Shown here one piece after another: positions 4,107 to 43,640 of a DNA stretch of 60,257 nucleotides (positions within the stretch are counted from its first letter, which is position 1; the number at the start of each line of letters is the position of its first letter). Source of the DNA: Podarcis erhardii (taxonomy: Eukaryota). The stretch is taken from NCBI GenBank assembly GCA_964252035.1, contig CAXUOO010000130.1; one strand, written 5' to 3'. The position numbers and the translations under genes were made by a program. Under the pieces are notes generated by a model. The model made no database searches, was not told the origin of the DNA, and saw only the letters and a program-made list of their open reading frames with translations.

Positions 4107-6857
4107 CATATAAGGACTAAAATTGCATGTGTTTTGATAATAGGGAAAATGAACTATGAGAGGTCCTACCCGATTGCAACCTGGAATAGGATAGATTTTG
4201 AGACTATATATCTTGTCATTTTCCGCAAAAGTGTATGTAAAATCGCAAGTCGGTTGATGTGCGTCCACATGTTTTTGAATGCAAACCTTCAACGTACATG
4301 AGAATTCTCTAATATGGTACGAGTGAACTGTGGGAAATAAAAGCTTTTACTTGTTGCAGCGATGTTGTCCTATTTGTGAAATACATGTTGGACAGCAACG
4401 TATTCTGAACGAGCGACGTAAGGAAGGAGAACAAAATAAACAAGTTGCTCACAATACTGCCGCACTTGTGGCCATTCTTACTGCAGCGCAACTCTGCAAC
4501 AATTTGACGGGAATTGCTTGCTGTCGAGCTCGGCTTGTGCAGTATATTTTCCCGCACGAACCTCAGAAATTTGGTGTGCAAAGTACACACCTTCTTTATC
4601 TGCCGGATAAAAGGTGCATTTTCTACAGTTGTAGTCGTCGAATATTTCAATGCTTTGTCTCGTCTGATGTGTCCCTCATATCAAGAAGAGCAAAACAAAC
4701 ATTCGCCACAAAGCGCTTTCGTGTGAAAAACTAATCAGTCCCCACGTGCACTAAATACAATAAAAAAAGAATGAGCTGTTCAAATGTCGTCTGCTTCCTT
4801 TCAAGCCTCGAATACCGCTCCCTATAACGTTAGATCCAATCATATTCTATAAGCGACCTCAATGCGGGACTGCCATAATCTGGCAGTCTGAAGGTTTACA
4901 AATGCAGCAGTCGCACTTGAATTGATATTTTGTCGATACGAACTCAAATTTTCCCAATGAAGTCTTCATCTCCGGCTTGCAGGTGACACAGCTAAGGCTT
5001 ACTGCTTTGTCACTATGTATACATGTGTTTCTGCTGGTCTTGTCGTTGCGCATCACTCTGTTCCAGGAACCGATATCAGTCTCTTAGGTTCGCTTTATGA
5101 AAGTCTCTGCAGTTTTATTATTGACAGCACGATATGTACAAACGCAGCAAAGACAAAACTGCAGCTGGCTCTTTTAATCGGACTGCAAATCTGAACACTA
5201 GGCATAGAATGAAACTAAACCCTGGTCTGCTTATTAAGCCAGACTATGAGATCGCCACGGCGGTCGGAAACCTATATATACTTGCAGGTGCTATCGACCT
5301 GGTTTATAAATTTCATTTGCGTCTAGGTCCGCATAATTTGAAGCAAATTTGAGTTCATATACGTATATTCATAGATTTACGTTTATCTATTCCTACAAAC
5401 CAAAACATGTGCGGCTCTGACGAACATGGATGCAAGCGCTGTCAGCTCCTCAATGTTTGAGTAGAATTTTTGTGCCTTTTTGCATCAAGAATATAATATG
5501 AGACTACTTTGCGCGTCTTTTTCATAAAGCAGGAAGAGGCGTTAGAATCACATGCTCCAAGAACAATAATTTTCACAAAAATATCCACTATGTGGATTCA
5601 CATGAAGTCCAGGTAAACGTTCAAGTTTTTTTTAACACCTATGATTTCGTAAAGAGACCAGATATCTGCCCTATTGTTGCGAAGGCACATATGAACACAT
5701 TTCGTGGAAAAAATTACCCAGTAATCAATCTCTGCGGTTGGCATCAAATCAAAAATTCCCGCATAGATAACAAAAGTTGCCAAAATCAAATTCAGTATGC
5801 TTGTATTCCAGAATTCATGCAACTGCCGTCCTATCAAACAATAGCAGAAATCTGCTCGCATATTTCGAGTGTGGTTGCCTTCGTGCTGAACGTCGGGAAC
5901 TAAGGCCCTTTTCTCGATCAGCCGAAGCTAAGAGAATGCATTAGTGAAGGGGAAGAATTCCTCAAAAGAGAAAATAAAAATAACGTTTGCTCTGTTGGAA
6001 TGATAATTTTTTCATGAATATAAAAGCGTGATATAAGTGTTCTATGTAAATAATACCGGTTATGAGTACTAATACCTAGCACGAGAAACGCATTGTATAT
6101 TCTAATTATCCAAAGGATGCTAGGAGACTGAGCAGCAGCTCAAAATCATTCCCGCATGACTGAAAGTTTATCTGCCACGCTGTAGGATAGAAAATCTGGC
6201 AGTCAAAGATGAGTTTGAGCCCCACGCCAGTGAGTCGCGGCCAAGCACGCAGCTGGTTGGCTTTGAAGTTTCTGCAGCACAGCAATGAATGCAGGTGGCC
6301 TTTTCATTTCTTTCATACATTTCTGCACAACGTTACCGGTGCGCAAAATGCATTTTCAAACAAAATGTATATGCATCCACACTTTGGCTGGTCAAATGCT
6401 GGTTTCGGGTTGCATCAACAATCATAGTCCTCGGCACGCTGTGTTTGTGACATCCTTTCGTAAGTTAGTATTTCGAAGTAGGTCCATCTGTGCTAAATTG
6501 GCGTGAATACCTCTGGAACAGCTTCATCTTAATCTATAACTGCAAATGGTAAGGGGTGTTCATCTACTACTACAGCTAAGATCTTGCTCTGTTTAAACTA
6601 GAAATAATCCTACTGTCTGGCACTTTGAATACTGAGCATACGAGCTGCAATCGTTTCTGTGCGCAAGCTTGACTGGAAACTGCGTTAGGTAACACATCAG
6701 CGTGAATGCGTTAGAGACCACTGCGCGACCATGATGCTATCAGTGGCACAGCTTGTACAATGCAGTCGTCTCTGTCTACAGACACTTTCAATTCTCACAC
6801 TGTTACTTACACTTTTTAGTCTCCAGATATAAGTGCTTTCTCGTGGACAACGTTGCT

Positions 6858-7083
6858 GCCCTGCGCTCCGTAATAATCGCAACTACTGAAATTGCATGGA
6901 CGCTAAACTTTTTTCCCAACACCGTAACACGACGGTGTATGAGATGCTTTAAAGGCTCGTTTACAAAAGTGCCCTGCGCTCCGTAATAATTGCAACTACC
7001 GAAATTGCGTGGACACTAAACTTTTTTCCCAACAACGTAACACGACGGTGTATGAGATGCTTTGAAGGGTCGTTTACAAAAGT
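6858..7083. repeat. Tandem duplication, 2 x 113 bp, ~94% identical
   Basis: The unit gccctgcgctccgtaataat...cgtttacaaaagt starts at 6858 and 6971. I counted 7 substitutions. Confidence 0.95.
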
Positions 7084-13594: not shown

Positions 13595-13704
13595 TCTGTA
13601 TAATATCAATAGAAGCAGGGTGCAAAGCGTCGGATCTAACGTCTGCTGATCTGTATAATATCAATAAGCAGGGTGCAAAGCGTCGGATCTAACGTCTGCT
13701 GATC
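13595..13704. repeat. Tandem duplication, 2 x ~55 bp
   Basis: The unit tctgtataatatcaatagaagcagggtgcaaagcgtcggatctaacgtctgctga starts at 13595 and 13650. The second copy has a 2-nt deletion. Confidence 0.93.
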
Positions 13705-16961: not shown

Positions 16962-19900
16962 TTACGTAGGCAGAAATGACTTCCGATGTGCGTTTGTGAT
17001 AAGTCTCAACGTGGTGCTCCAAGAAACAGCTGGGACGTGGAAGGGCGTCACGCAGCACCGAGGGTCTCCTTCATGAGAGAAATGCTCTGCAGCAAGAACT
17101 TCTGCTAACTTTGACTGAAAACCACCACCTCCGGCGAGAATTTGACTTGATATTTCCTCAGCTGCAACTGCAGTGCAGTGAAGACCGCTCATCTCAGTAT
17201 ACCTATCTCGCTGGGCACAGATTTTCAGGCATGCCACAAACTTTTCACCCGCAGGAGGGCACCACCCAGAGCCAGACGATTCAGCACTTTCAATATTTAT
17301 ATAGTCTGGAATGTTTTCTCCAGTAGGCAAAACTAAAAATGGGCAAGGTAAGCGTCTCAAACTAAGTTCACGATCTGGAGTGTCAAAAGCCAAGTCCAAT
17401 GTTGAAGGCTGAAACAAAAACCCCCCATGCACCACACTCCAGAGCAATTTGATTACTTTCCAAGTACTCCTTGCTCCGTTTTCTTTGCATTCCCTTCTAG
17501 TAAGACGGTGGATTATACACAAACCGCAAAATTTATCACCGTAAATGCAAGTTTGGTAAACGAAGAACACCTGCAAAAAAGTTTTTACTACTGCGCCGCT
17601 GAATTTCGAAAGAATTTGCAACGCGTTCCACCAAAATACGCAGCTTCACATAAGTGACTAGAAATATACACTGAACATACATGGGGAAAGGCATCCCGAT
17701 TACGTCTCATATCTCTGATCTCAAAGCACGAGCACATCTCCTCCCTGCTAGCAGCGATCTAGGAAGAAGAATCTCAACTCACTTTTACATCGCCACATGC
17801 CATTTGCATTGCGATACGCAACAGATTTTGTCGATCTGACAGCAAGCCATTAACCTCCTACGGAACACTTACGGAGAAATTTTGTATATACGTCGCGGAC
17901 TGTACATGCTACACTGAACAGGGGGCTATGGTACAAACTGTCAACAAGCTCAACGTTGATCACAATCGCCACAACCGCCAAATACGTGTACACGCCAAAA
18001 GCAAAGTTCGCAGTATCTGCTTATTCAAACAGGGTAGAAACGTTACCCCGTGTGTACCCAATCGTGAATTTCACTAATCTTTAGAAAACGGAGGGCTGAA
18101 AATAATTTCTGTGTGAAATGTCTCCTTGTTTTGTTTTACAGACGCCACGTACGTTATTAAATCTATTATTTCTGTGCTCTATTGCATTATGGTACCAGCT
18201 TACATTTCGCCCGCATACCCATTTGTACTGTGTGTTCCCGGTAACGCCTGCCTGTAAGACTTCGTCTCTCAAATGCGTCTGCTCATACGAGACCTTTGGT
18301 ATAGAATCTGCAGAACAACGCACACAGATATCGCACACAACGGACACTCTACACAGGTGAGCTGTGACGGTCTTTTAAGTCAGAAGAAGCTGCTCCACAT
18401 CACTCTCATGAAAAAAGGTGCTGCAGTAAAATCATTGAGCTTAAAGTTGCAGCGTCCTTGCTAGAGAATTGACTCGTGATTGAAGCCCAGAGCAAGACGT
18501 ACACGGCCACAACCATGACTTCATAAAGAACTTGTAATTCAACACAAATGTGAAAAATGTTCGACAAACGGAGCAAACAGAAGGACTACCTATGGGTGCG
18601 ATTGATGCAGAAGATTTCGGTCCAGCATACGTCAAAACTGAATCATTACCAAGATTTCCGTGTTGTTTGAAAGAAAAAACCGTTGATACTTTTTGCTGGA
18701 GACCTGAAAGACCTGTCTGCGCGCTGCACTGTGTTGTCAGCTTGGTGACTAATTGTCCATTTCCAGCTCGCGAGTAGTGCAGCCTCCCCATAACCTTATC
18801 GAGGTCACCAGCAGAACAGCACTGCACCGCTGCTGGCTGATTTTGAATCGAAGGAACAGCTCGCGAATCAACATTGCTCGTATTAAGTTGGCGTATCTGC
18901 TGTTGCCAGTGTTGCTGGGCTACTAGTACATCTACATGACGATCAGAAGGTATCTTTAAAGCTGAAGATAGATACTGGAATGTCAGGCGCTCTTCTTCAA
19001 ATGCGATCGACACGCATACACCCAAACCGCCAAAACGCCCAGCGCGACCACTCCGGTGTAGGAGGGTCTGCTGATCCTGTAAAACTCAGAAAACTGATTG
19101 AATGTTCGCTCCTACCACGGAAAAGTAAACTTCTATCAGTTAGCAGTCTCAAATAAACATATTAATATAGAGAAATTCATCATTACAAGCACGGTGTAGG
19201 AAGGTCTGCTGATCCTGTAAAACTCAGAAAACTGATTGAATGTTCGCTCCTACCACGGAAAAGTAATCTTCTATCAGTTAGCAGTCTCAAATAAACATAT
19301 TAATATAGAGAAATTCATCATTACAAGCACGGTGTAGGAGGGTCTGCTGATCCTGTGAAACTCAGAAAACTGATTGAATGTTCGCTCCTACCACGGAAAA
19401 GTAAACTTCTATCAGTTAGCAGTCTCAAATAAACATATTAATATAGAGAAATTCATCATAACAAGCACCGCACAACGCCGCTACTATACGAAAGCACATC
19501 GCACATCACTAAAACGCTTCAAAGTCGGCAACTTGACAGCTGATAAAGACTTACTCTCGGAATATCCAAGTTCACCACAAGGTCCACCGCAGCAGCATCG
19601 ATGCCGCGACTTATCTGTTAAAGTAATGTCACATATTATTCATCAGAATGCTGTATCTGTGCAATATAGCCGGTAACTTCCACTACACTATGCGCATGAT
19701 CGCTAGACGAGATATGTAAAAAATTGAGCGAACTCACATTTAGACACGTTCCAAAGTCAAAGTGCTTACGACTCAGAACTGGCCGCGAATTGTTTTTCCC
19801 TCATAGCTGCATGTAACGAAGTTTTTCTTGATGGTCTTACAAATTATCAAAGCGTAAATTTGTATGTATGCTCCACTATCCAAACATATAGTTTTATTAT

Positions 19901-22900
19901 GTCGAAGTCTTTAATATGTGAGTTTCTTGTTTTATTAGGAAATCAAATGAAATTTCCTTGGAGCCTTAGATCAGGTCTTTCAGCAAGTCTGCAGAATTGA
20001 TCACTACAACTACACATTATTGGCACCGTTTTCCAAACTATCCGCATCAGTAATCTCTCTCTCTACTTTCAAATACAGAAATTGGAGCTTGGACAACATA
20101 CCTCTCCCCAGCAAGACAAACTTTTCTTGCTTCAACTACCTTTGAGTTTATGTCAGCTCCGCTTAAATTCATAAAACGGAGCGTTCTCGTCACCATATAT
20201 CGCGACAACTACCTGCGCATTTGAACTTCAATTTATGGAGTGGCTGCAGAACTTACACTACAAAGAAGCTCGCCTTGCAAAAATTATTGTGCAATGCCGG
20301 CCATAAACAAAATTCATCGAGGAAGTAACAAAGACGAGATGTTTAGAAGTCCTCATCAAGAAAGTGCAGGTAAACTTACAACATCCGAGCAGACCAGCAC
20401 GCGGCAGTAAACACGTTTCAGCGCCAGAAGATTGCGCAGGCGAGTTTCCTGCGCTACTTTTGAGCTGAAGGCAAAACACATGCAGTCAAACGGATCACCG
20501 AACCGTGAACATTATCACCGAAAATATGAAATTTTCTAAGTGTATTCTGCCTACATTCAAGAGCATCTCTTGCACAAATGCAGGCACCAGACCTGACATT
20601 TTTGCATATCGCTAACAGACTAAAAAGACTGCTTGCAAAAATAGTTCACGAGATTAGTCGCCTGCGTTCTTGGGAGGTCAGGTGAAGGTCCGCTGTCGTT
20701 TTCAAACTCAGTAGTCAACTCTCAACGTAAGCCCGACAGTATTTCCTTACACTCAAACAGTTCAACTCCAGTTCGCATGAAATATCAGCATGCACCGCGC
20801 GTTCTTGACACAATGGAGTTTCGCTTACCTAGTATATAATGCCGGAACACCAAGTTGCGACAGACACTCTGCAACTTGGGCTCCGCTGTGCAGAGAAAGC
20901 AAAACAAAAAATCAACGATGATATTAACAAAATACGTGAGACCAGTGAGAAACAATCAGTAAGTCGCGTTCAGGAAAGGTTTGCCTCTTTACATCAAGAA
21001 TGACAGAACGGATGAAATCAAGTATGATAAGCAACACATAAAAAATTGTTTTAGGGCAGAATTATATAATTTAGTCTCAAAACACACTCCGCACCTATTT
21101 ATTTTCATAAAAGCAAGATGGCACTAGCCATTTACTACCAAATGATTGGATGGTACTATAACGTTTGATCCGCAGAGAAAGCCGAACTACAACCTTCAAT
21201 CTTCAAACAAGGCATTAATGCGATTCATATACATATGCATAGTCAACCTTAAAGTAGAAGAAAGAACATGTGATTAAAAACTACGTTGAGAGCATATTTG
21301 AAAAACCCCACAACGCATATCAGTGACATACACCGTGTCTCGCAAATCTAAGAATAGTAGCGCGTGCAACGTATGAGCTACCGAAAGCTGCAAAATAACT
21401 TTTCTTTTTCCTTGGACACATGACTACTTCAAAGTCCTGAGGATGAAAATACACACGTATATGCGCGAAGTTATCCTACGATCTTATTTTTTTTTTCTTG
21501 ATTTGTTGTGTTTTTCCCTCACTTTCTTCGTGATAGAAGAATTTGTACAATACATACATATATATTTAGATATAGATACAGACACATATACGTACATGGA
21601 ACACGTGTCTCCGAGTATATACGTTTGTAATCTACTGGTACGGAATAAAAAAATATTAGCTCCAACGCTTGCATCAACTACTTCGCAACGTGTACGACTA
21701 AGTGTGTAAGCAGTATTTTACGTTATGAGAATTAGTTTCAGTTATTTAACAAACCAGTGTGTAATCAAGAAAGACTCGTACACACCGCCTAGACAACATA
21801 ATCGGGAACAACATACGAAGTTGTAAAATTGCTGTCACAGAGCATTCTAAAAACTAGTAGTAACAGAAGTTTATCAATACCTTGATTTGAACAGTTGCAC
21901 GCGCTGCATTGTATTCTACACACTTATTTGTTCTATAATTGATAATGACGCTTATAACGTATAATAATGCTTACATCTCAGGGCTATTACAAAACACTAT
22001 CGCTTGCCGAAAAGCAACATTCGTGAGCACCTGCCGTAAAGCCTCAACCTTTGCACCCAGCTGCCGCATCAGAGATGGCTCATCCGGCAAAACGAGCAGC
22101 GCATATTTGAGCCCTGAGGAACACCAGACAGAGAATATGCTTTTTACCAGAGAATGTGTTTGCTAAGCAATCCGAAGTTTTTCGGAGCAGTGCATGTGAA
22201 GAAGTTCGAATCAGATGGTTCAGCTACGACATATCGACGCACATCAAACGGTTGAAAAATGCTAGTTTGTCACGTTATCGGACGTCTCTCATGAAGGAAC
22301 GTCCGCGGAAGCGTCCAAACGACGGATCTGGTAATTCTGTACACATTAGAGAAGACGAAAAAATGATTAGCACATAGATGATACACGCAAGTGTGTCTGC
22401 ACATACAACTAGCAACCTTATGCTGATGATAGTTGATAGAGATTCGGCTATGTTCTTCAACTCTCTAAACAAGCGTTTTCACTCTTTTTCGCACGTGTAA
22501 AGTCAAGCTTCGATCCTAACTTATGTACCGGAAAGAAGAGGCAAAGGCGCTGCTTTGCTGGCTCCGCTGCCTTGCGCGTCCGAGGCGGTCCTCTTCGTCG
22601 CATCACCGCCTGCCTTTTGTGTAAACTTCTCCTTGACAATCATGTCGCCCGCCTCCACGCTCTTATCCGCTTCCGAACCAACAGCACTATTTGCCGTTTC
22701 AGTGCACACATCCCCCCCAACAACTGGAAGAAAACACCCCGAAGAAGACGGCGACTTTGTCAAAAACGTGTCTACTACGATGCCTTTTGATGAAGATCTT
22801 CTGCAGCTACCTCTCTTCAGATCTTCGCCGTCGGGAACCTGCTCGTTAGTGCGATTTGTTTCCTCTGACCGAAGAACCGCCGCATTTGGCGCTTCATTGC

Positions 22901-25900
22901 AAGGAGATTGGGAATTCTGCTCGCTTAGTTGTTCTTCTTCGTGTCGCACTCGCAACGGCTGATGCTGATGCAGCTTCGGCTGCGAAATGTTTGTCCGATT
23001 GTCATGCGCATCATTGTGAGCACAAGACCCACTCATCGGAGTCTGCAAATCTGCTTGTTGTTCTGTCCCAGTCTCTGCCGCTCTCGCTGTCTCGCGTTCT
23101 ACTCCACTAGCAGCAGCTTTCGAAATGAGATGACTGTGGAAAAACTCGCGCTCTTTGTGTACGACGAAAGAAGAGCAGAGATGTATACGTTCGAAAATAC
23201 GACGACGTTTCACCGGTGAACTGAAGCTCGCGGACAGTCTGTTGTCGACTTGAAGCTGAGGACGCTCGCAAGCTGTTGCGTGCATATTCTCTTGCACAGC
23301 ATGACGTGGTGTAGAGGAATACGGAGGTATGTCGAGGAGATGAGAAGTATCTGAAGTTTTCGAGACGCTCTGATCTGCCTGCCTGGATTGTTCTTCAGCT
23401 AGTCCTTTGCCACCATCTTCGTAGAAGCCGCTCAAATACCTCAACACTGCAGCACTGCGAGACGCCGCCGCTGCTGCCGCATGAGCAGCAACAAAGGCGT
23501 CCACCTCTGTTGCATCTCGTGAAATTACATCATCATTAGTCTCTGAGTCACTCTCCGCACATTCATTTGACTGCTTTACTGTATGCCTGGTTGACTCGCA
23601 GCCGTGCACGATAGCAGCAGCATTTTGCAACAGCTGCTGCTCATGTTCTCTACGGTCGCCCCTCTGCTTTACATTTTTTGCGTCAGCTGTGCGACAGAGA
23701 TCTTCCAGAAAACTAATGCAGAAGGGCGGCAGTGTTGCAGAGAAGGCCATCAGTTGTGTGTGCGGTTGCAGCAAGTCCATAATGAGCTTCCTGTACAGCC
23801 AATGCCAAGCAAATACACTCGAGCAGTAACATCTTGTACAGCTGGAAATCCGCGCGCATTTGAAGCTATCATTCTCGACCAGAAAATGCACCTCTGCAAC
23901 ATTGAAGAATTTTTGAATGTCACCGTTCGACAGCTTATGCAAATACACTTGCTTCCTCAAATTTTGCGTGCACGCACGGAGGAAAGAAAGTAGCTTCCCA
24001 AATCTGACTTTCTTCACGCTAAATGAGAAATTTAGTATTCTGGAGAGAGACCTCATACGAGAGAGCCTCGAGTGCCACCTGTGCAAATCAGGAATCAACA
24101 ACACGCAATGAGTGCATAGCCGCCGAAGCACTCTACACGTCGCTGCAGCTCAGTTCAATGCTACTTTCTTCTTCATCGAACAAGCTCTTTCCTACACATC
24201 AACCAAGAACGCGTTGCCCTACTGTAACTGAAGCCGAAAAAAGTGATCAAGAAGCATGTCGGCCTCGTCCAAAACCACCGTCTCCAAATGCTGCTGAATG
24301 TGCCGAGTTAGCAGCGCGAGCCGCTTCTGAGATTTTTTTCCACAACGATGTGCCCCCGGTGAAAGTTGTTGGGCCGAAATTCCACAAGGTTGACCAGGGT
24401 TTGCACTATGCTGCGAAACAAACGGGTCATTCCCATGGTCCTTGGCAATTCCCTCAGAAATCTCGCTATCAACATGTACGTTTTCACAGCTGAAGCCCGA
24501 TTCATTGTACCGGAAATTGGCAGCTGTGCCGTTATTATCGGAACAAAGCGTATGCGATAGATTAGCTAAACTTTTCGCTTGAGCAAATGTTTCATGGCTG
24601 ATCCCGGGATGCAAGTGATGGAAAGCTGACGAATCGCGGCAGCAGGGCCAAAGAGCTGCCACCTGCTGTGACGCCTTGTTCCGCAGCAAACTAAGTAATC
24701 TTCCTGACACACAAGAAAAACGAACAAACATACATAACACAACTTCTTCATGTGTGGCAGTGTATACGTTGCTCGTCAGTTTCTACTTTCTTCTGGCCCA
24801 ACTCTCACAGAAACTACTGCATACCAGCCGACAGCGCGCCTAACAAAGGTACTTTTTAATCTCATTCGTCTGAACAGATTTATCTTTACATTACCACAGG
24901 GAGAACAACAGGCGATACCTGGCAGCAATTCAGACCTCGATTTTGCAAATGAGAAATACAGCAAAGAGAACTGATGATGCGTGCCTAGAATTTTACATCT
25001 GCGTGGTGATATGATTCGTGGTTTCATTAATTGCGGAGCAGAAAGCGCTATATTACGTACCGAAAAAAAGGGCGACCAAGCTACTGTGTTCGTGAACTTT
25101 CGAGTAAGAACAGCGATGTCGACAATAGGTAAAGAAACTGTAAGACCACGTTTTTCAACGGACAGCCGTACAATAGAATAATCCAAATATATCTTTGCGT
25201 GTACAGACTTCAAAGCGTTTAGATACTTATCAGTCAGAGCTTGCAGCTTTCCCTGGCGCAAAGCAGCGTCGCGAAGAAAATCCTGTAAACTTCTGCAATT
25301 GATGTCGGCCACTGACTGATTCACCCGTGCGAATGTGATACACACTTGTAAATAAACCGCTCTCATGGAACTATTTGCTGATAGTGCCACTGTTTCTTTG
25401 ATGGTTTCCGTACGTTAAAGCCGCAATCAAAATCAAAGTGCTCTACCAATATTTCTGGCCCGTAAAACGATTTACGCTTGACATCAGCTTGACCACCACT
25501 GCAAACATATTTTCGAAAACTTTCTCCACGCCAGCATAATACACACAGCAAACTGTTGGCGACTCAAGTTATTGTAAAAAAAGTCGAGGTGGCGACACGC
25601 GCAGCAAAACCTTCAAAAACTTTTCACACGGTGGAGAGCCAATTGGCTATATACGATCCAAATAATCAATTATGATTACCTGGTGTGCTGATAAGAATAT
25701 GCGGACGCTGATAGAGCTGCTGTTGACACGCACACAATCGCCGACCTCCAAAAAGGCACGCATATCGCAGGCGCTGCGAAGCAACACATTCAAATCATTT
25801 CGTGATACAAAACACAATTGCTGGAAAGCAACGCTGAATTCAACATCACAAAAACTGAACCCTTGTAGAACGTATTCGGCGAGCTGAAAATGATCCGCAA

Positions 25901-28900
25901 CTTCATGTGTCTATCAATAAAAATATGTACCAGGAAAAGTGAATTGAACTGCTTACTTTGAGTAAACTCTCTCACAAAATAAAGACTCTAACATTTGAGT
26001 TCTAATGGCTGTCATACACACTCCTAGAGATTGTGCGCACTATCTGCACACATATATGTACCATATTGGCGTTGATATTATGAATATGAAGATTGACGCG
26101 GCCGTACAACTATAGAGTTACCCAAAGAAAAGAAGATGTACATATACGTATATATACAGAGAGAGAGAGTGAGAGAAAAAAACACCCGTAAAGGTAAGTA
26201 CTTATATAGACGAAATCACATATAGCTGCGGATAAGCCGACTCATGTTTGTAACACCAGAAAAATGAATTTCCAGCTCAGCACGTCTCTATAGAATCTTA
26301 CATATAGCTGATAGAGTGGTCTGATGTGGGCTATGCTAAGTTGAAATCATTTACGACATCATCATCGTCAAAAAATGGAAAGGACAGGCATAAATTTTGC
26401 GAATTGATATAGGCAATAGGAAACGAAAACCTCGAGCAAATGCCGAGTAAAATTGGTATATACACAGGGGATAATAAAATTGAAAGAAAAAACGAACTTC
26501 TTTAGAGCAAGGAATGCGCCACACAATAGAGAGCGTGTGAAAAGAATTGGTACCAACAGAAGCTGCTTTACTGCCTTTGATATCTTAGCAGTTAACTCAG
26601 TATGGCTAAACTTCTCGACGCCGTAACACAGGGGCCGCAAATAAAAATGAGCCATCCTCGCAGAGTGACGAAGAGCGAGAAGGCGCAGAAAAAAATCAGT
26701 CTCTCACCGGTTCTTCCATGAACCAAGCCAACCGTCTGAATTCCTCGGCAACCTGAATCGCTAACTCTCGCGTTGGAGTTAGGATAAGCGCTGCAGCTAC
26801 GCACTCTTGATCCGCCTTTACAGAGGGATCTCGAGTTTCTTCGCAAACTTGTCGTCCGCAGTTCTTTCTCTCTAGCGAAGTTCGTTGGGCTGCCTCTTTC
26901 TCAGGTTCCACCGCTTCATCTCGCATCTCTACACCTCTCCGCTGCCGCTCTTGCTCCACCTGCTGCTGCTCCTGCTGCTCAAACTCCTCCTGCTTCCACT
27001 GAGTTTGTCCTTCACGCGTCTGCTGCTGATGCTGCGATTCAAATCTTTCCTGCTTTCGCTGACTAAATTCACAACTCCGCGGCTGCTGTTGCTGCTGCTG
27101 CTGCTCGTGTCTACTCGACCCCACATTTTGCGCATCCCCAGTCTTCAGCATTTCCCGCTTTTCAAGCCACTCTGCCCCTCCTTGCCTGCATCGATGCAGC
27201 TGCAAATCCATCTCATTCTTTGTCGCACTCAGCTGATGCTGCGACTGCTCTGCCGCCTCATCAGTTGAGACAGCCTGCTGCTGCAGCTGCAGCTTTTCCT
27301 CTTCTTCACCGCTCACCAAAGGCGACAATATCTCCTGCACTTCTTTTCGCAGCCGATGCTTCTGAAACTCACACTGCAGCTCTTGCGAAGTCTCGTTGTT
27401 GCTTTCGACCCTTTCTTGTACAAAGAAAGTGTCAACAACGCGCACAGCAGCAGACGCACTGCCTTGTTCACCACCAGCATTTTTCTGTTTGTCCAGATAG
27501 AAAGCGTGCCAGCGCCTGAAGCGGCTTATAAGCAGCTGCAGAACGGACAGCGCGAATGCGATTGTTTTGCCTGTGCCTGACTTCGCCTGGACGATAAGAT
27601 CTGTAAACACAAGCAAAAAAATACTCCTGAAACACCAGTACAAGGCTACTACGGTCGAGCTTACTACTGTCTCCCGTACGAGATACACTCTATCATATTC
27701 ACCCGTCGTCATACACTCGTCCAGCAACTACTCAAAAAAAAGGCAAGACTAGTCAGGAGCATCGCACCACTCTACTCATACACATACAAATTTAGGTGTA
27801 CATAAATGCGTGCGTATACATATATGTATGTTGGAAAGAAGTCACTAGTTCTTCATAAGTCTAGTTTGCTGCAGAAAAGCAAACGAAACCACTCAAGACT
27901 GTCATCCGCAAAGCTGTGTTGAAGATTGTATTCAGCGAAGCGTGCAACTGCTCCCGCGAGTGTACAGAAATAGCATTCTAATTCAATATTGTCCACCGAC
28001 AAAGCGCTCTATGCTCGGCGTTTGCTTAAATTCGAATTGTATCTCAAATTGAAAGTCCTCATTCGAAATCTAAGACCTGATCGAATACATTCTTCGATTG
28101 CTCGCGTGCACGAGCGCGCTTGCATCAAAATCACATAGGTACAGCAGCACACTCCATGCCAAGTACTGCGATAAGGATACCGTTCATAAACGAATTTTGC
28201 CAGCCTAACAAATTTCGATATTCCCCTGCGGCCAGACAAAACCGAGTACACCCCCCTTACGGCTTTCAATTTAATGTTCTTGCCAAAGAGATATGGCGAA
28301 CATCAGCAGACCTTCTTACGCTTCTGACAAAAACATGAGCGCAGTGCTGAAGTACGCATGATTATCTTAAATCTGGACACGTCTGCAAATATCCTCTTTA
28401 CTTTGTAAGGCTTGGAAGTCTCAAAAAGTGGAACAAAAAAAAGCGAAATAATGCCGCAGCGCTGACACAGCAGCATTCGCAGCAGGTAAAAACAGCCATG
28501 TTCGTAACGTGACGCGACTCTGCAATCCAGGATAAGAAAATGAGATAAGGTGACTCATTTTTAATTGTACCGCTACATTTTAGGTAGAATCCATTTACGG
28601 TTTCAAAAAGGTATATACATTCCACACCAGAGCTTTTGTCCTCTTGTGGAGTTGTTGTAAGCAAAGAAATTCGCATATATCTCTAGACGTGCATAAGCTG
28701 ATCGTCGAGTAGAGAGGGAAAGGAACCGAAATCGAAGAGACAAAATAGATGAAGCGAGAAAATATACTGGATTGCCTATATATATATATATATATATATA
28801 TCAGATATGCATACGTAAAGCCCGATGCGGTTACAAAAGCCGCTAAAAACGAAGTATTTGAAACAAAGACAATCTAAGTGTACGGCGCGTCGTTTGAATT

Positions 28901-30179
28901 TAAAAATGGGCAGCAGCCCAGCATATCTGTGAGTGCTAGTCTTTGAGACGATGAGTAGATATCAGTTGGCGGCATGCAGACTACTACACAGACACTAATA
29001 ATCTGAACAGCTGTTTATATATATAGTAGAAATATACGTGCAAGTGTGTCACTCGCCCGTCCCTGAAGCGTGTAGAGATACACGCACCTGAGTACAAGTA
29101 CAGAGAGGTACCTACAGAGAAAGTAGGCAACTTAAGACATACGTTTCGGTGAAAGTTGAAAAAAATGCATAGCCTGTTCAAGAAGTGAAGGTCACGCATA
29201 GGACTGCCCACGCGAAAAAGCTTGATTTCCTTTGCAGGCCAGCCAGCTGAGAGTGCTTTTTGTATGTTCTCAGTTACTTGTGTGGATAAAAGGTCTGTAC
29301 AAAATTCTATTCTAGCCTTCGCACACATACACATACAGGATGGTGACGGTATGTTCTTCAGAAATAGCGGCACAATAAGAACCGACAGATAAATGTAGAT
29401 TCGTGGAACACTTGTGCAAAAACGTGCACACCAGTACGGGACAAAAAGACATAGTAGAGAGTTTTTAGGAAGTTGATGACGTCGACAGGAATACGACCGT
29501 TCGCACATACTGACGTCGCACTCACAAAAAGACTCTTACTTTTACTCTGAATAGCCCGTGGCACGGTAGCGCACTGAACTGGAGAAGGAAGGTTCAAACC
29601 CATTACCCGAATGCTCCGCAGCAGTGCTCCATCTAACCCCAAATCAGCAAAGGTTATGATAGAAGCAGGATGACCTTGACTTTGCGACTTAGAGCATACA
29701 CGTTTCTGGTCGTCTACAGGCTTTTCTAACGCTGGGGCTGCCGGTGAAGTAGCTGCTTCAGAGAAAACAGATTCGAAATTCGACAATTCTGCGTCAACGT
29801 GTGCCATATGTCTACTTGATGCTACTTCTGGACTTGCAAAATTCACAGCATCAAAGCCCGCATCTGCTGGTGTTCTCTGCTGAGGTACCTGCATGAGATC
29901 ACAATGCTGCTGCTGCACGTCTACAGTGCGTGAGGACGGATGATGCGGTTTCAGATCCTTTTCAGCTTCTATGTCTGACACTAACAGCTCAAGTTTTCCG
30001 GATCCGGCATATTCAACGAAAATATCACTAAATTTTTTACGAGATCTTCCGGATTTCTTTTCCTTACATGGCTTCTGCTTGTCCAACGACCCCGCGACAA
30101 AGGTATTTGCAGCTCCTGCTATATTCTCCAACAGAGCAGGAAGCTCTTCCTCAGCAGCAGCAGACTCGCAAGAATCCAT
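16962..30179 (-). CDS. DDX20: DDX20/Gemin3-like DEAD-box RNA helicase, ~1580 aa, about 12 exons, with large low-complexity insertions
   Basis: All motifs occur in order across phase-consistent GT-AG exons: Q motif (TFADLGL..LPSPVQ), motif I (LIVQAKSGTGKT), Ia (LILTPTRELAIQ), GG (CLFGG), Ib (ISTPGR), II (VLDEAD), III (FSAT), IV (QAIVFCNS), RLRNLLALKRVYCRVLVCSD, V (ISRGIDAAAVDLVVNLDIP) and VI (HRSGRAGRFG). Exons: 29540-30179, 26708-27600, 25680-25773, 24223-24703, 22529-23790, 21975-22113, 20829-20885, 20380-20464, 19555-19614, 18590-19076, 18204-18307, 16962-17408. These sum to 4749 nt, divisible by 3. PSPVQ, LIVQAKSGTGKT and SRGIDA..V.LVVNLD.P match DDX20 better than eIF4A or DDX19 as I recall them. 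The last two exons and the ATG at 30179 rest on splice and phase logic only. Confidence 0.85.
19054..19468. repeat. Tandem repeat, 3 x 138 bp, spanning an intron/exon boundary of the DDX20-like gene
   Basis: The unit cggtgtaggagggtctgctgatcctgtaaaactcag...cattacaagca starts at 19054, 19192 and 19330. Copy 2 differs from copy 1 at two bases, and copy 3 at two other bases. Confidence 0.97.
27084..27106. repeat. (CTG/CAG)n coding microsatellite encoding poly-Gln in the DDX20-like insertion
   Basis: The run ctgctgttgctgctgctgctgct reads QQQQQQQ on the minus strand. Similar short CAG runs occur in the PH and hydrolase exons (e.g. ~56265-56283). Confidence 0.85.
28777..28801. repeat. (TA)n microsatellite in DDX20-like intron 1
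   Basis: Direct reading. Similar intronic tracts lie at ~35526-35555 (PH gene) and ~45870-45918 (TPH gene). Confidence 0.9.
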
Positions 30180-38194: not shown

Positions 38195-41100
38195 TCATTT
38201 CTGCAGCGTAGGTTCCGTGTGACGTAAGTTGTATGAAATTTTTTTGGAAGACTTGCATAGCTCACTCAGGGCTTCACGCGGAATAGCATCAGCCAGCGAC
38301 ATGTGACACAAAGGGCAATACTCAAGCTCCTCCACCTCCGAAGCGAAGAGGGAGTGGTTACATCTGCTGCACATCAAGATCTCAGCGCTGTAATCCAGTG
38401 CAGACATCACACGCAAGTCTACATACCCTCTGCCACCCTTCAAACCCTTCTTTTCTCGTGAATAACTACCGTTAGCAGCGCAACTGAAAATTGATCTCCC
38501 ACTGGCGACGCAGAAACAAAAACATACACCACATGCAGGGCACGCGGCATCCCAAAAGTGTATGGCTTCATGACATTGAAAACATTTAAAACCTGGCAAT
38601 AAATCCATGTCTGGGGGATGACGACTAAATATACTCAGGGCTAACTCTGCGATCGCATCTCTTAGTCGAGGTGGCATGTTGTCCAGCGAGTTTTGAAGTA
38701 GCATAAATGCCCTGGAGCACACTAGCCAATTTTCAGCAAGGTAACTTGCAACCGCAAGGATTGAGTAAATGGTGCAGCCGTCGATAAAATCTGTGTAATA
38801 GCACAGCCGCGTTGCTGTGCAAAGAGCAGAATCGAAACGATTGTTGCTCAAATGCTTATGAAAGATGTTGTACAAATGATACGCTTCAGCGCCTCTCCAC
38901 GTATAGTTCACGAGGGCGTCAGGCTTTACTGCGCTGCGCGAATTTGCCGTCAGTTGTTCCAAAGCATATGACCCGGGTGGATATGTCGTTTTCAAAGTTC
39001 TGTCAGTGTTCTTGAAGGTAGCGCAGAGGCCGTCGCAGTTCTGAGAAGTTCTGGCTGAATCCTTATCGAGCTCTAGCGCAGCAAGCACGTATAACTTCTT
39101 CTTTTGAAGTGAGGTAGTTTTTATGTCAACCATCTCAGTGGCGACATGAAGCAGCACTTTTGCGGCCTCGAGATGGCGACCTGCGCGCTGGTATAGTTGC
39201 ACTGCCTGCAGAAATTTCTTCTGCTTAAGTAGGTGATCGCCAAATGTCGCTAATGACTTGTGAATCCGTGGATTATTTTCATTATTCGCAATGTCTACTG
39301 CTAAGTCCCAGCGGCTCATATAAATGCAGGTGTCGAGTGCAGTTTGCAAATGATTACCGCGGCAATAGGCCATGACAGCCTCTTCGCACAGCCCAACAGA
39401 TGCTAGCATGCGTCCAATTTCAACCAAGAGACTGTCGTCAGACTGCAATTCTTTGGTCAACTGAATCAGTTCCTCAAAATTTTCAGTAACAAAGAGCGCA
39501 TGAGCTAATCTTCCAGATTTATTTATGCAGCGATATGTTTCAATTGCTCGAGTCCAGTTCCCTGAGTCTTTGTAGGCATCTGCAATCTCTTCTAGCAAGT
39601 TCTCGGTATCGCACAGACCTCGATTTCGCAGCTCAACCACATGCGGCCAATCGCCCATGAGGAACCTTAAGGAACTCACAAGGTCGGTTCGCCCCACGGC
39701 TTCGTATACTTGCTCAGCTTCTTCCAAACATCCAAAGTTTGCTAATACTTCCGCTCTCTGTTGTTCAGAGTCAGGCAGGCTTGTAAGCCGCTTCACAAAA
39801 CATATTCCGAAATAGTCCTGACACCTGTCGAAGTCCAAAGATATCAACGATCACGAATCAGTGCTGAAACTCCCGCTATTTCACGCTTCATCAGCGGGCA
39901 TCTACGCTGGTGAATCGGAGAATTGAGTGATAAAGTATGAATTCTGCAAGGCCGTTGCAACAGCCGATGCTCACGTACCAGCGTCACAAGCGCCACGCTA
40001 TGAAGACACCATTCAACAAAAGCACAAGTGTATCTTTCAAAATACCTTGTCTACGAATCCTCCGTCGCCAGTATGATAAACGCTGGGCCTTATATAACTT
40101 ACTTGATAAATGCTTTTCTGGCTGTTGTAAAGTCGAGAGCTCTTAACGCAGCCTTTGCAACAACTTGCCAAAGTACTTTGTGCGGTTTCTGCGCGACGAA
40201 GGAAAACGCTTCTCTGAGGTTTTCAAGATTCGTCAAAATACTTTTTGTATCTCGGAGAGATTTGGTCTCCAGTCGATAAATGCAGGCTTCGTCGGGTGTC
40301 GAAGAAGAAGATATATTTTGTCAACGTAAACACCCCTCATTTGTAAGTTTGCGAACTCGACAATACGAGCTGAACACTCTAACCTCTCTTCTAAAGATCC
40401 GTCTTTCACTACGTACAGCAATCCTTTTTCCATCATTACGAATGCATCAGCGTCATCGCATGCCCACAGTAAAGCCCATATATTATCCCGTTCGAAGGGC
40501 AAACGACTTCCGAAACGGGTCTCCTCTCCTGGACGAGAGGAATAGATATTGAATAATTAATTGTTAGATTAAGAGAGCGCAGCTATTCTCATCCCGGGCA
40601 GCGAATATTCACAATTACCAAAGCGTCTCCGGGACCCATGGTTAATAAATAGAGTCAAGGAGCTCCCTCATGAGAACAAGGAATGTCATGCCAGCCTTTC
40701 CGATATGAAAAGGCTTACGACTATAATTACAAATGAAGCATACTTACGGAAGTGAGCGTAGCACAGACGTTGTTCTTCAATCACTAATAACTTGCCATGT
40801 GACGTTTGTGTTTGCCTATTGCATCCGTCTTTGTCCCCACCAAGACTGCTGCACAGCTACCTGTAAATCCCAACCAAAGAACTATCTCGAATCTCTTTAG
40901 TGCCGAATATAATTTTTGACGAAAGTCATTTTACCTGCCTCCGACGTTGCTATCTGGTTGTTCGATCGTTGCTCCGCTTCTGAGGTGGCGGTGGGTTGTC
41001 GTCTAGGACTCCTGTGGAGAGGATATATACTTAGGTGGTTCAGAGTATCTATGACGGCTAGGCAGCGGCCAGTACAGTTAAACTGCAGCAAGAGAGGAAC

Positions 41101-43640
41101 CGTATTAGTTTCAAATGAGTCTTCAAGTTGGAGCGTCTGTAAAGAGTAGAGGCGCATTTCCCCGTTTTTCCTCCCGACGACGACATTATCCTCGCTGGCT
41201 GTCAATGCTACAATTTGATTATCGACATTATAATGTTTTGGATCAGGTTCGTCATCCGTATCACGCGAGGTGTTCGGTGACTCGCTGTAGAGGTCTATTA
41301 TCCACTCCGTGAACTTGCAGTCTTGAACATCAACTTGTTGTCTAGTTGCAGAGGAAGACAGCGGCAGAACTGAGCTCACGCTGGATGCAATTGAGGAACG
41401 CAAATTCACCGAAGCATTATCCAAACATTTCTCCTTTCCTCGCTCAGAGAGTCGGGCACTGTATTGCCAAACGAATATCTTCTGAGCGCCGGCTACAACA
41501 ACATGAGAGTTTGTGATCGACGCCAAGCTACACATTAAATTTGTTTGTATTGTCTTGATGACATTCCCCACGGCATCGAAGATGCTCAAAAGATAGGCAC
41601 AGTTGCGTAAATCGTTCCCACTTTCGAACGCATCAACATTAGTAATAACAACGCAGCAATTTTTCGCCGCTTTCACATGTAGCGGTCTTCTGCTAAGCAC
41701 CCGCAAATGCCTGGTGTTCAAGTCCATATTCCAAAACCAAAGAAGATGCTTGCACTTTTCTGTCTGAAGGCTGCTATAGACCAAGGTGCGAGCGAAGTAC
41801 GCCATTATGGTTGGACACCGAGTGCACGCAAAGAGCAAAGATTTGCCGGATGCTACAACAAGTTTGTTTCCTGCCAGATTCCAGCTGAACGCTTGCATTT
41901 GCATACCGCATGGAAGAGCGAGCGTGTACAAATGTACTCCCCTTGAGCTGTAGAGTCGAATTAGAAAGCACGATTTCGCATGGCTGTTTTTAGGGCCTAG
42001 TGGATGGTATATGGAGCTTTTTCCGGCAACTGCTATAATTCCGCCCGTAGGGCGCCACGCTATGGACAGACAGTGACTGAGGCAAGCGTCGAAAGAAAGC
42101 GGCTTGTCGTCAGCTTCATCAACGAAGAGCTGCACCCATCCAGTCTGATATGCAATAGCGAGCGGACGCTCTGCATCGAACTTTTCTCTACAACGAGGAA
42201 ACCAATCGATTCCTGCGAAAGCACAGCTGACAAAAAAACAGCAAAAGTGAGTTGACCGCGTTGCTGTTGGCAATATCGATAGAGTGTTTCTCTGCTTCTG
42301 AAAAGCACCGGTAGTTGAATCTGCCCTTTACCCACATGTTAGTGAACATGTCAGATGACCACTGGAGGAGCTTCTGCAACAGCCGCTACACATGTCTGGA
42401 TTTCTAAATAGCCCTCAACTTATTTCGTCAATTTAAATTTGAAGCTAAATACTCTCAAACATGGTCTTGAGGAAATCTCTAGTGGAGCTTTGAAGGACAC
42501 TATAACAGAGCAGTGTGAAAAGTTCCATCTACGTCTTTGTATATGCACGCACACACCTGTCGAAGGAATAAAAGCCTTGGTAGCTGTACTATGAGACTGC
42601 TTTGGCCCTTCCAGCTGTGAAGGCAAGGAGTGGCTGTAGATTCCGTCGCCATCATAAAAAAGTATCTCTCCTCCTTCAGAACACAAAAGCAAAGCCGTAC
42701 CAGTTGGTGACCACACAACTCTACTCATATGCCGCTTTACTTGTTTGTGCCAAAGTGTCTGACCGTCCGATGTGGCCATCGTCAGGCTGCAATCTGAGTG
42801 TACCAAACAAATTCTCTGTCCATCGGGCGACCATGCGGCAGTTTCCACTGGTTTACACAAGTAGGAAGTGACTTTATAGTCAAACGAGCAAAGTGATTCT
42901 CGTTTCCAGAACAGGATGTGTCCCGCTGCGTTCACTGCGCACACCTGTGCTTTAGATGGACTCCAGCGCACTAGAGTGATATGGCTCTGTTGATAGACAG
43001 ACATACAGGCAACTCTCAACCATCTCGAAAAATATTTCACGCGTGGAATTTGTTACGCGGAACGAAGCAGTCTTATAGTGCTCGTCACGCTACCGGCTTC
43101 CCAAGAAGACATTGAACATTTCGTTTATTACATTAAGTTGACAAATACTGCTCTCTTCCAATGTTTGACAGATAGGGGAAGTAGAAGTTTTGCAGTTGTG
43201 GTGCCGGTGTAGATGAGCACTTGGGACATTCAGAGATACCAATTTAACCTGTTGCAACGAAATGTGGAGCTACTGCCTATATTAACCGAGTAATTACATA
43301 TTGACAATGAATTTTTGGACTGGCTAGAACTTTCCTGATGTAATTTATTCTTTTGCAACGGTACAGCATGTATAAATGAAAACCTAACTCGAAATCAACT
43401 CCTTACACTAGGATAAAGATCTTTTTCTTTAGATGTAAGAGTCTTCAAGCAATTTTCCTCAATAAGATCTTCTGTTGATACGGATGCATTTTCTTCCGTA
43501 AACATAGATGTTGTGTCCAGCACGTTGACGGATCCATTGACACCTCCAAATACTAAAAGCCCCTGGTTCTGCGTCCAGCTGAGGCATGATATCTCGACGT
43601 TGCAAGTCGGTGTCAATTTCTTAGCGAAAAAGGCGTACAT
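38195..43640 (-). CDS. WDR35: WD repeat-containing protein 35 / intraflagellar transport protein IFT121 (IFT-A), ~1370 aa; 1-nt frameshift in exon 5 as assembled
   Basis: The N-terminus MYAFFAKKLTPTCNVEISCLSWTQNQGLLVFGGVNGSVNVL matches the WDR35 start. Other matches: WSPDGQRICLVH, IVALTASEDNVVVGRKNG, ERDNIWALLWACDDADAFVMMEK, SLRDTK..PHKVLWQVVAKAAL, CQDYFGICFVKRL, QKKKLYVLAALE, WRGAEAYHLY and C-terminal Cys zinc ribbons ending YCPLCH. Exons: 43407-43640, 43132-43248 (less certain), 42557-42986, 40935-42212, 40103-40528, 38195-39824. Confidence 0.95.

What the first reader, a model, noticed from the sequence alone, without database searches (positions are those of the whole stretch)
19054..19468. 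Triplicated 3' splice site: two decoy acceptors precede the real acceptor of the helicase motif VI exon
Seen: the 138-bp unit contains the distal end of intron 9 (a CTAAC element, a pyrimidine tract and CAG on the minus strand) plus the first 22 nt of exon 10 (DQQTLLH). The pre-mRNA therefore presents near-identical acceptors at 19352, 19214 and 19076. Only the last continues into HRSGRAGRFG. The first two read DQQT(L/F)LHRACNDEFLYINMFI* and cut motif VI. Internal GT sites would give 22- or 28-nt micro-exons, and none of these, alone or paired, restores frame. Each copy has private substitutions, which argues against a simple collapsed or duplicated read. Established: motif VI is essential for DEAD-box ATPase activity, spliceosomes usually favour the proximal competent AG, and DDX20/Gemin3 acts in snRNP assembly. 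Inference: the cell skips two equivalent acceptors, or this is a splicing/NMD dimmer on an snRNP-biogenesis factor, or it is a recent hypomorphic allele. It could also be a stage in intron gain by tandem duplication.
Basis: partly seen in the sequence, partly recalled or inferred. Interest (0 to 1): 0.75.

Follow-up and report, generated by a model that had tools for sequence, protein, structure and literature searches.

The report
Repeated splice acceptor in parasite helicase
A 138-base stretch covering the end of an intron and the first 22 bases of the next exon is repeated three times in a parasite's RNA-helicase gene; the repeat is real and probably varies in copy number between isolates, but the same kind of boundary-spanning minisatellite is already known from amphioxus and human genes.

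Summary
Window 19054-19468 is a 3 x 138-bp head-to-tail repeat. Each unit carries 116 nt of the intron 9 end plus the first 22 nt of the motif VI exon of a minus-strand DEAD-box helicase gene.

It is not an assembly artefact. Contig depths in a run of the same sample (4.92 and 2.73) match a three-copy model with the assembled private substitutions exactly; two- and four-copy models fail. An independent sample with near-identical flanks holds the unit as a closed 168-nt k-mer cycle at about 13 times flank depth. A lineage about 5% diverged also shows excess depth. I read this as a copy-number-variable minisatellite, not a fresh private allele.

Toxoplasma, Neospora and Besnoiti orthologues show that only donor 19554 to acceptor 19076 gives the conserved helicase sequence. 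The same intron in Toxoplasma has one acceptor.

The window is a coccidian contig assembled with a lizard genome. The DDX20/Gemin3 label is not supported. No RNA data exist, so actual acceptor use is inferred, not shown.

The architecture matches amphioxus 'mirage' minisatellites, which splice normally, and mirrors the human F7 intron 7 VNTR. Verdict: new member of a known kind, moderate-to-low interest.

The parts
19555..19617 (-). Exon 9 (motif V, ISRGIDAAAVDLVVNLDIPR). Its last base is 19555.
   Evidence: Reading frame and tblastn of the Toxoplasma orthologue, 79% identity.
19469..19554 (-). Unique 5' part of intron 9, beginning with the donor GTAAGT at 19554-19549.
   Evidence: GTAAG donors recur at the gene's other inferred exon ends.
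19330..19468 (-). Repeat copy 1, first on the RNA. It holds CTAAC at 19419-19415, acceptor AG at 19354-19353 and a 22-nt exon-like piece at 19352-19331. Private bases: unit positions 8 (T, giving GTTATG) and 111 (C).
19192..19329 (-). Repeat copy 2. Donor-like GTGCTT lies at 19330-19325 and GTAATG at 19324-19319. It holds CTAAC at 19281-19277, acceptor AG at 19216-19215 and an exon-like piece at 19214-19193. Private bases: positions 63 (A) and 128 (T, Leu to Phe; window 19202).
   Evidence: An X1 contig covering 19154-19232 carries this private base joined to the copy junction at single-copy depth.
19054..19191 (-). Repeat copy 3. Donor-like GTGCTT lies at 19192-19187 and GTAATG at 19186-19181. 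It holds CTAAC at 19143-19139 and the productive acceptor AG at 19078-19077. Exon 10 starts at 19076.
   Evidence: The orthologue alignment starts at 19076.
18444..19076 (-). Exon 10 (motif VI, HRSGRAGRFG, and downstream). The frame is open to the stop after 18444. The true 3' end of the exon was not determined.
18444..29999 (-). The host gene: a divergent DEAD-box helicase with long inserts and about ten exons. Motifs: Q (~29600), I and Ia (27600-26702), Ib (25770-25678), DEAD (24704-24222), SAT (~23700), IV (22114-21983), then exons at 20896-20830 and 20466-20374, V (19617-19555) and VI (19076 onward).
   Evidence: Pfam DEAD hit; six-frame reading; tblastn of the Toxoplasma orthologue.

Best explanation
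This is a real, copy-number-variable minisatellite of the 'mirage' type. It straddles the intron 9 / exon 10 boundary of a DEAD-box helicase gene in a coccidian parasite.

A 138-bp segment (116 nt of intron end plus 22 nt of exon) was duplicated in tandem at a 1-nt microhomology. Unequal exchange or slippage then changed the copy number: three in this isolate, probably ten or more in another.

Only the last acceptor (19076) gives a helicase with motif VI, so the functional mRNA removes the whole array as part of a lengthened intron (478 nt instead of about 202).

Inferred, not shown: the upstream acceptors are largely ignored. Each is followed by only a 22-28-nt exon-like stub that runs straight into donor-like GT sites, which is too short and too poor in exon context to be defined as an exon. 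Any leak to them gives a premature stop 21 codons in and is presumably lost to nonsense-mediated decay.
For: Structure:
- TRF, the repeat finder and the copy comparison establish the array.
- X1 contig depths of 4.92 and 2.73 are reproduced exactly by the three-copy model and by no other.

Variability and age:
- X3 is an independent sample whose flanks are about 99.4% identical. It holds a 168-nt contig, which is 138 + 30: the length of a closed k = 31 cycle. Its depth is 37.5 against flanks of 2.4-3.4.
- X4, about 5% diverged in flanks, has unit contigs at depth 14.6 and 41 against flanks of 3.2-3.9.

Productive junction:
- Toxoplasma, Neospora and Besnoitia orthologues are contiguous across exactly this join.
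- The intron sits at the same position in Toxoplasma and in a Cystoisospora-like contig, each with a single acceptor and no repeat.
- The gene looks functional: all helicase motifs are intact over about ten exons.

Precedent:
- Amphioxus BflGb6 has 150-160-bp units of intron 3' end plus exon 5' part, with 3 versus 6 copies in two haplotypes. RT-PCR showed regular splicing (PMC3087553).
- The human F7 intron 7 37-bp VNTR has functional but silent pseudo-sites (PMC1557585).
Against: - There is no RNA evidence at all, so the share of transcripts using each acceptor is unknown.
- The three acceptor modules are identical from -116 to +22, apart from a C/T at -5 and one exon base. Nothing in the sequence itself marks the last one.
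- Co-transcriptional 'first come, first served' splicing would favour the upstream sites.
- Copy number in X3 and X4 rests on contig depth at low coverage. It cannot be tied to this locus, because the cycle contig has no flanks.
- Predicted RNA structure gives no help in masking the decoys (z = 0.13).
Confidence: 0.62

Rival explanations
1. Dosage dimmer or hypomorph. The upstream acceptors are used at a substantial rate, so a large share of transcripts carries a premature stop and is degraded. Helicase output would then fall with repeat number, whether as a tolerated cost or as a tunable, heritable expression level.
For: The decoys are complete and near-identical 3' splice-site modules. They are transcribed first. 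A premature stop follows 21 codons later. Copy number seems to vary widely between samples, which would give graded output.
Against: The array persists, apparently at ten or more copies, in other samples and in a diverged lineage. That is hard to reconcile with strong loss of a conserved helicase if every unit competed equally. The amphioxus and F7 precedents show silent pseudo-sites. No RNA data exist.
Confidence: 0.22
2. Assembly artefact. The true locus has one (or two) units, and the triplication comes from mis-joined or duplicated reads.
For: The parasite is at low coverage in the host's read sets (depth 2 in X1). Tandem repeats are a classic place for assembly errors.
Against: Depths of the two X1 repeat contigs match the three-copy model to two decimals and reject the 2- and 4-copy models. 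A contig carries the middle copy's private base linked to a unit junction. Unit-to-unit junctions also occur in independent samples X3 and X4.
Confidence: 0.03
3. Intron or exon birth in progress. The exon-like stubs are, or are becoming, real micro-exons, or the array is a step towards a new intron position.
For: Each internal unit is bounded by a donor-like GTAATG and a full acceptor. The gene's exon 3 uses a GTAAT donor. Three 22-nt stubs together (66 nt) would keep frame without a stop, which is possible only in arrays of four or more units. The mirage model for intron gain was proposed in PMC3087553.
Against: In the three-copy allele no combination of 22- or 28-nt stubs keeps frame. The intron is ancient, not new. 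An insert before motif VI would sit in a conserved spacing.
Confidence: 0.08
4. The helicase gene is decaying in this lineage, so the decoys do not matter.
For: The protein is very divergent and carries huge inserts. Several exon pieces have no Pfam hit.
Against: All core motifs and reading frames are intact, and exon-by-exon identity to Toxoplasma is 45-79%. The same long-insert architecture is present in annotated Toxoplasma, Neospora and Besnoitia orthologues.
Confidence: 0.05

Closest known systems
'Mirage' minisatellites of amphioxus (Adh3; globin genes BflGb6 and BflGb9; PMC3087553 and its reference 68)
   Same: Both are head-to-tail repeats whose unit spans one exon-intron boundary. BflGb6 repeats the 3' end of an intron plus the 5' part of the next exon, in units of 150-160 bp, with 3 versus 6 copies between haplotypes. 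Many units keep AG/GT signals, and only the last unit continues into the exon.
   Different: This case is in an apicomplexan parasite rather than a chordate. Copies here are far more alike (97-99%). Normal splicing was shown by RT-PCR in amphioxus and is only inferred here.
Human F7 intron 7 37-bp VNTR (PMC1557585)
   Same: A minisatellite with one element spanning an exon-intron boundary, so the authentic site sits beside several identical, competent but silent pseudo-sites. It serves as a natural model for splice-site choice.
   Different: F7 repeats the 5' splice site and the authentic site is the most upstream, which fits 5'-to-3' scanning. Here the 3' splice site is repeated and the productive site is the most downstream, which scanning from the donor would not predict.
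Intron gain by tandem duplication of an AG|GT proto-splice site (PMC3265369, PMC2891723, PMC4974935)
   Same: A short tandem genomic duplication supplies ready-made splice signals, and the extra copy can be removed as intron.
   Different: Those duplications lie inside coding exons and create a new intron of unit length that restores the mRNA. Here a pre-existing, ancient intron is merely lengthened, and no new intron position arises.
NAGNAG and other tandem acceptors
   Same: Several acceptors compete for one donor.
   Different: NAGNAG sites are 3 nt apart, share one branch site and keep frame. Here the sites are 138 nt apart, each has its own upstream module, and use of the extra ones ends the reading frame.

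Membership tests
Mirage-type minisatellite (tandem repeat spanning an exon-intron boundary) | The unit contains both intron and exon sequence of one boundary, repeated head to tail. | tested here: met
   There are 116 nt of intron end plus 22 nt of exon start in three copies.
Mirage-type minisatellite (tandem repeat spanning an exon-intron boundary) | Minisatellite-sized unit (10-160 bp in the described cases). | tested here: met
   The period is 138 bp.
Mirage-type minisatellite (tandem repeat spanning an exon-intron boundary) | Copy number is unstable or polymorphic between haplotypes or individuals. | tested here: inconclusive
   Sample S1 has three copies. In X3 the unit depth is about 13 times flank depth, and in X4 about 4-12 times. 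These are depth-based figures at low coverage, and no read spans the array.
Mirage-type minisatellite (tandem repeat spanning an exon-intron boundary) | Regular splicing is maintained despite the extra splice signals. | not testable with these tools
   No RNA run holds the locus.
DDX20 / Gemin3 | DEAD-box helicase core motifs (Q, I, Ia, Ib, II, III, IV, V, VI). | tested here: met
DDX20 / Gemin3 | Closer to DDX20 than to other DEAD-box subfamilies. | tested here: not met
   The DDX20 N-domain (2oxc) ranks about 54th, at E = 3e-17, behind Hera, DbpA, CshA, eIF4A, DDX6 and others. The C-domain's best matches are DDX6, DHH1 and DbpA. No phylogeny was made.
DDX20 / Gemin3 | C-terminal region that binds SMN and the Gemins. 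| not tested
   The 3' exons beyond 18444 were not modelled.
[quoted passage not shown] | The duplication lies within a coding exon and contains AG|GT. | tested here: not met
   The duplication spans an existing boundary. That intron is at the same position in Toxoplasma.
[quoted passage not shown] | Splicing between the duplicated sites removes exactly one unit and restores the original mRNA. | tested here: not met
   Internal GT sites leave 22- or 28-nt remainders, and none of their sums is a multiple of 3.
F7-type boundary VNTR with silent pseudo-sites | One terminal element of the array carries the authentic splice site, and the others carry identical pseudo-sites. | tested here: met
   The last unit carries the productive acceptor. 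This mirrors F7: it is the 3' site, not the 5' site.
F7-type boundary VNTR with silent pseudo-sites | The pseudo-sites are silent in vivo. | not testable with these tools
   No RNA data.

The most novel reading that the evidence does not exclude
The array is a heritable, fast-mutating expression rheostat. Each extra unit would add a competent decoy acceptor that diverts a share of transcripts to a premature stop and decay, so isolates with 3 versus 10 or more units would make different amounts of a conserved helicase. Alternatively, if all decoys are silent even at a dozen copies, coccidian spliceosomes must choose 3' splice sites by downstream exon context rather than by order of transcription or proximity. 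The locus would then be a natural 3'-site counterpart of the F7 model.
Probability: 0.12. Interest if true: 0.6.

Novelty: new member of a known kind. Interest (0 to 1): 0.33.

Why it matters
The locus is a clean natural experiment on 3' splice-site choice. Several complete and near-identical branch-region, pyrimidine-tract and AG modules sit in a row, only the last one is productive, and their number seems to differ between isolates. Junction counts against copy number would show whether proximity, transcription order or exon context decides the choice in an apicomplexan.

It also extends boundary-spanning 'mirage' minisatellites from amphioxus and human to a protist. On the practical side, it warns annotators that gene finders may pick the first acceptor and truncate this helicase, and that this 'lizard' contig belongs to a parasite.

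Tried and rejected
- RNA evidence: no run on record as RNA holds the stretch. The single sequencing-run run and the single read-laying run are both used.
- Word-indexed protein search with the exon 10 frame: no hit. The full HMMER search then found only Sarcocystidae relatives at 46-59% identity over the first ~50-75 residues of exon 10, and no closer species, so no orthologous intron from a near relative could be fetched.
- Exact scan of JGI metagenome contigs for the unit-to-unit junction: 0 matches.
- RNA structure masking the decoys: the 531-nt fold is no more stable than shuffles (z = 0.13). Rejected.
- DDX20 label: tested against solved structures and not supported.
- Dispersed-repeat origin: the unit occurs nowhere else in the 60-kb window, and X1 depth fits three copies genome-wide. 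Rejected for this isolate.
- Coding potential of the array: every frame of the unit has stops.
- The two other long-period tandem duplications in the window (113 x 2 and 53 x 2) overlap no convincing reading frame. They were not pursued as further boundary repeats.
- All searches were exon by exon, by reference.

Full report
**What is there.** On the minus strand, exon 9 of a helicase gene (ISRGIDAAAVDLVVNLDIPR, motif V) ends at 19555 and is followed by GTAAGT. After 86 unique intron bases comes a head-to-tail array at 19054-19468: period 138, 3.0 copies, 97% matches, no indels.
- Each unit holds 116 nt that end in a pyrimidine-rich stretch and CAG, followed by the 22 nt GATCAGCAGACC(C/T)TCCTACACC.
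- The 22-mer and a 57-nt intron piece occur three times in the window and nowhere else; shuffles give none.
- The array is 415 = 3 x 138 + 1 nt, so the breakpoints share one base of microhomology. A single-copy intron would be about 202 nt; it is now 478 nt.
- Only four columns vary. Positions 8 and 111 are private to the upstream copy, positions 63 and 128 to the middle copy, and the last copy equals the consensus.

**Reading of the three acceptors.**
- The upstream sites (first exon base 19352 and 19214) run into a stop after 21 codons.
- The last site (19076) continues into HRSGRAGRFG.
- GT sites follow each upstream acceptor at +22 (GTGCTT) and +28 (GTAATG). The second is plausible as a donor, because the gene's exon 3 uses GTAAT. 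No sum of 22 and 28 for two stubs is a multiple of three.
- CTAAC lies 63 nt from the AG with six AGs in between, so it may not be the branch site. This does not matter for the argument, since any nearer branch site is also inside the unit.

**Is it real?** No RNA run holds the locus, and the runs that do are kept as k = 31 contigs.
- *Run X1 (same sample label as the best holder).* The flanks lie on long contigs at depth exactly 2. The contigs break at 19094/19065 and at 19430, where the repeat graph must branch.
- *Depth model for X1.* Two repeat contigs have depths 4.92 (19065-19183) and 2.73 (19154-19232). I counted, from the window itself, how often each 31-mer of these contigs occurs and multiplied by two reads. 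The three-copy structure as assembled gives 4.921 and 2.735. Two-copy models give 3.3-3.6 and 0.7-2.4, and a four-copy model gives 6.2 and 4.7. The second contig carries the middle copy's private base joined to a unit junction. The reads of this sample therefore hold exactly the assembled array. This is raw-read support, not independent support.
- *Run X3 (independent; another organism label and study).* Its flank contigs differ from the window at about 6 of 1032 bases. It has one 168-nt contig that spans a unit junction. The length 168 = 138 + 30 is what a closed cycle gives in a k = 31 graph. Its depth is 37.5 against 2.4-3.4 in the flanks, which suggests roughly 11-15 identical units.
- *Run X4.* Its flanks are about 5% diverged, and its unit contigs are at depth 14.6 and 41 against flanks of 3.2-3.9.
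- *What follows.* The copies in the window differ from one another (1.4-2.9%) more than X3 differs from the window in flanks. The duplication is therefore not brand new, and copy number very probably varies.
- *Caveats.* These are depth estimates at low coverage, and the cycle contig has no flanks that tie it to this locus.

**The gene and the organism.** A full HMMER search with the exon 10 frame found long DEAD/DEAH helicases of Cystoisospora suis, Toxoplasma gondii, Neospora caninum and Besnoitia besnoiti, plus one unnamed contig.
- The Toxoplasma, Neospora and Besnoitia proteins read ...VISRG(I/V)DA(A/V)GVDLT(V/I)N(V/L)DLPMD(S/K)QTFLHRSGRAGRFG.... This matches exon 9 joined to 19076, residue for residue in spacing. 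The Cystoisospora protein and the unnamed contig match only from the motif VI exon onward, because both begin at that exon.
- tblastn of the Toxoplasma protein lays out about ten exons carrying every core motif.
- In Toxoplasma the intron is at the same codon boundary, is about 835 nt long, and has one acceptor and no repeat of this kind. The unnamed contig also has a single acceptor before the same residue.
- The window is therefore coccidian, nearest to Sarcocystidae for this gene. Earlier notes of this scan say the assembly is a wall lizard's with a parasite assembled alongside. That fits the low parasite depth in host-labelled runs.
- The DDX20/Gemin3 label fails a simple test. The solved DDX20 N-domain ranks about 54th for the orthologue's N-domain, and the C-domain matches DDX6, DHH1, DbpA and eIF4A best.

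**How it most likely works.**
- *Shown.* The array is real. Only the last acceptor is productive. The gene is otherwise intact.
- *Inferred.* The whole array is removed as intron. The upstream acceptors are passed over because each is followed by a 22-28-nt stub that runs into donor-like GT sites. Such a stub is too short and too poor in exon context to be defined as an exon. Leaky use gives a premature stop and decay.
- *Why I favour this.* The array persists, apparently at higher copy number, in other samples, and the precedents below show silent sites. I give it about 0.6. The main rival, substantial decoy use that lowers output with copy number, gets about 0.2. An artefact gets about 0.03.
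- *Structure.* Predicted RNA structure offers no masking (z = 0.13).

**Comparison with what is known.**
- The same architecture has been described as 'mirage' minisatellites in amphioxus. In globin gene BflGb6 the 3' end of an intron plus the 5' part of exon 2 is repeated in 150-160-bp units, with 3 versus 6 copies in two haplotypes. RT-PCR indicated regular splicing (PMC3087553).
- The human F7 intron 7 37-bp VNTR is the mirror case at a 5' splice site. Its identical pseudo-sites are functional but silent, which the authors explain by 5'-to-3' scanning (PMC1557585). Here the productive site is the last one, which such scanning would not predict.
- Intron gain by duplication of an AG|GT proto-splice site (PMC3265369, PMC2891723) is related in mutational origin, but its defining features are not met.

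**Verdict.** This is a new member of a known kind. Its value is as a natural test of 3' splice-site choice, provided RNA and copy-number data can be obtained.

Noticed in passing
whole window; shown for 18444-29999 and 38195-42273: The window is not host DNA. Its genes are coccidian: the helicase's nearest relatives are in Cystoisospora, Toxoplasma, Neospora and Besnoitia. Earlier notes say the assembly is a wall lizard's. It looks like a parasite contig carried in a host genome assembly, seen at about 2x depth in host-labelled runs.
   Followed up: partly
window 38195-42273, minus strand: Two long reading frames match WDR35/IFT121 domains (second beta-propeller, TPR repeats, zinc finger; E down to 5e-34). 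This is an intraflagellar-transport A gene next to the helicase, in a parasite whose only flagellated stage is presumably the microgamete.
   Followed up: no
window 6857-7083 and 13595-13704: There are two more long-period tandem duplications (113 bp x 2 at 93% and 53 bp x 2 at 96%), so segmental tandem duplication of 50-140 bp occurs about once per 20 kb here. Neither overlaps a convincing reading frame.
   Followed up: partly
window 19202 (middle copy, unit position 128): The middle decoy's private base changes Leu to Phe (DQQTFLHR). That happens to be the residue the Toxoplasma, Neospora, Besnoitia and Cystoisospora orthologues have at this position. X3 and X4 units carry the Leu codon, so this is probably coincidence.
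   Followed up: partly
window 21496-21649: A TA/CA-rich low-complexity stretch draws very high contig depth in all four runs (47-268 against 2-3 elsewhere). The excess presumably comes from host or other simple-repeat DNA.
   Followed up: no
window about 18570-18723 (inside exon 10): In X1 and X12 a contig matches up to 18681 and then runs on for 255 unlike letters, and local depth rises (4.3 and 13.1). A short piece of exon 10 seems to be shared with some other sequence in that sample. Unexplained.
   Followed up: no
protein P0003 (Cystoisospora suis, CSUI_003400): The annotated C. suis protein starts at MDRQTFLHRSGRAGRFG, exactly at the motif VI exon. That gene model appears to be split at this same intron.
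   Followed up: no
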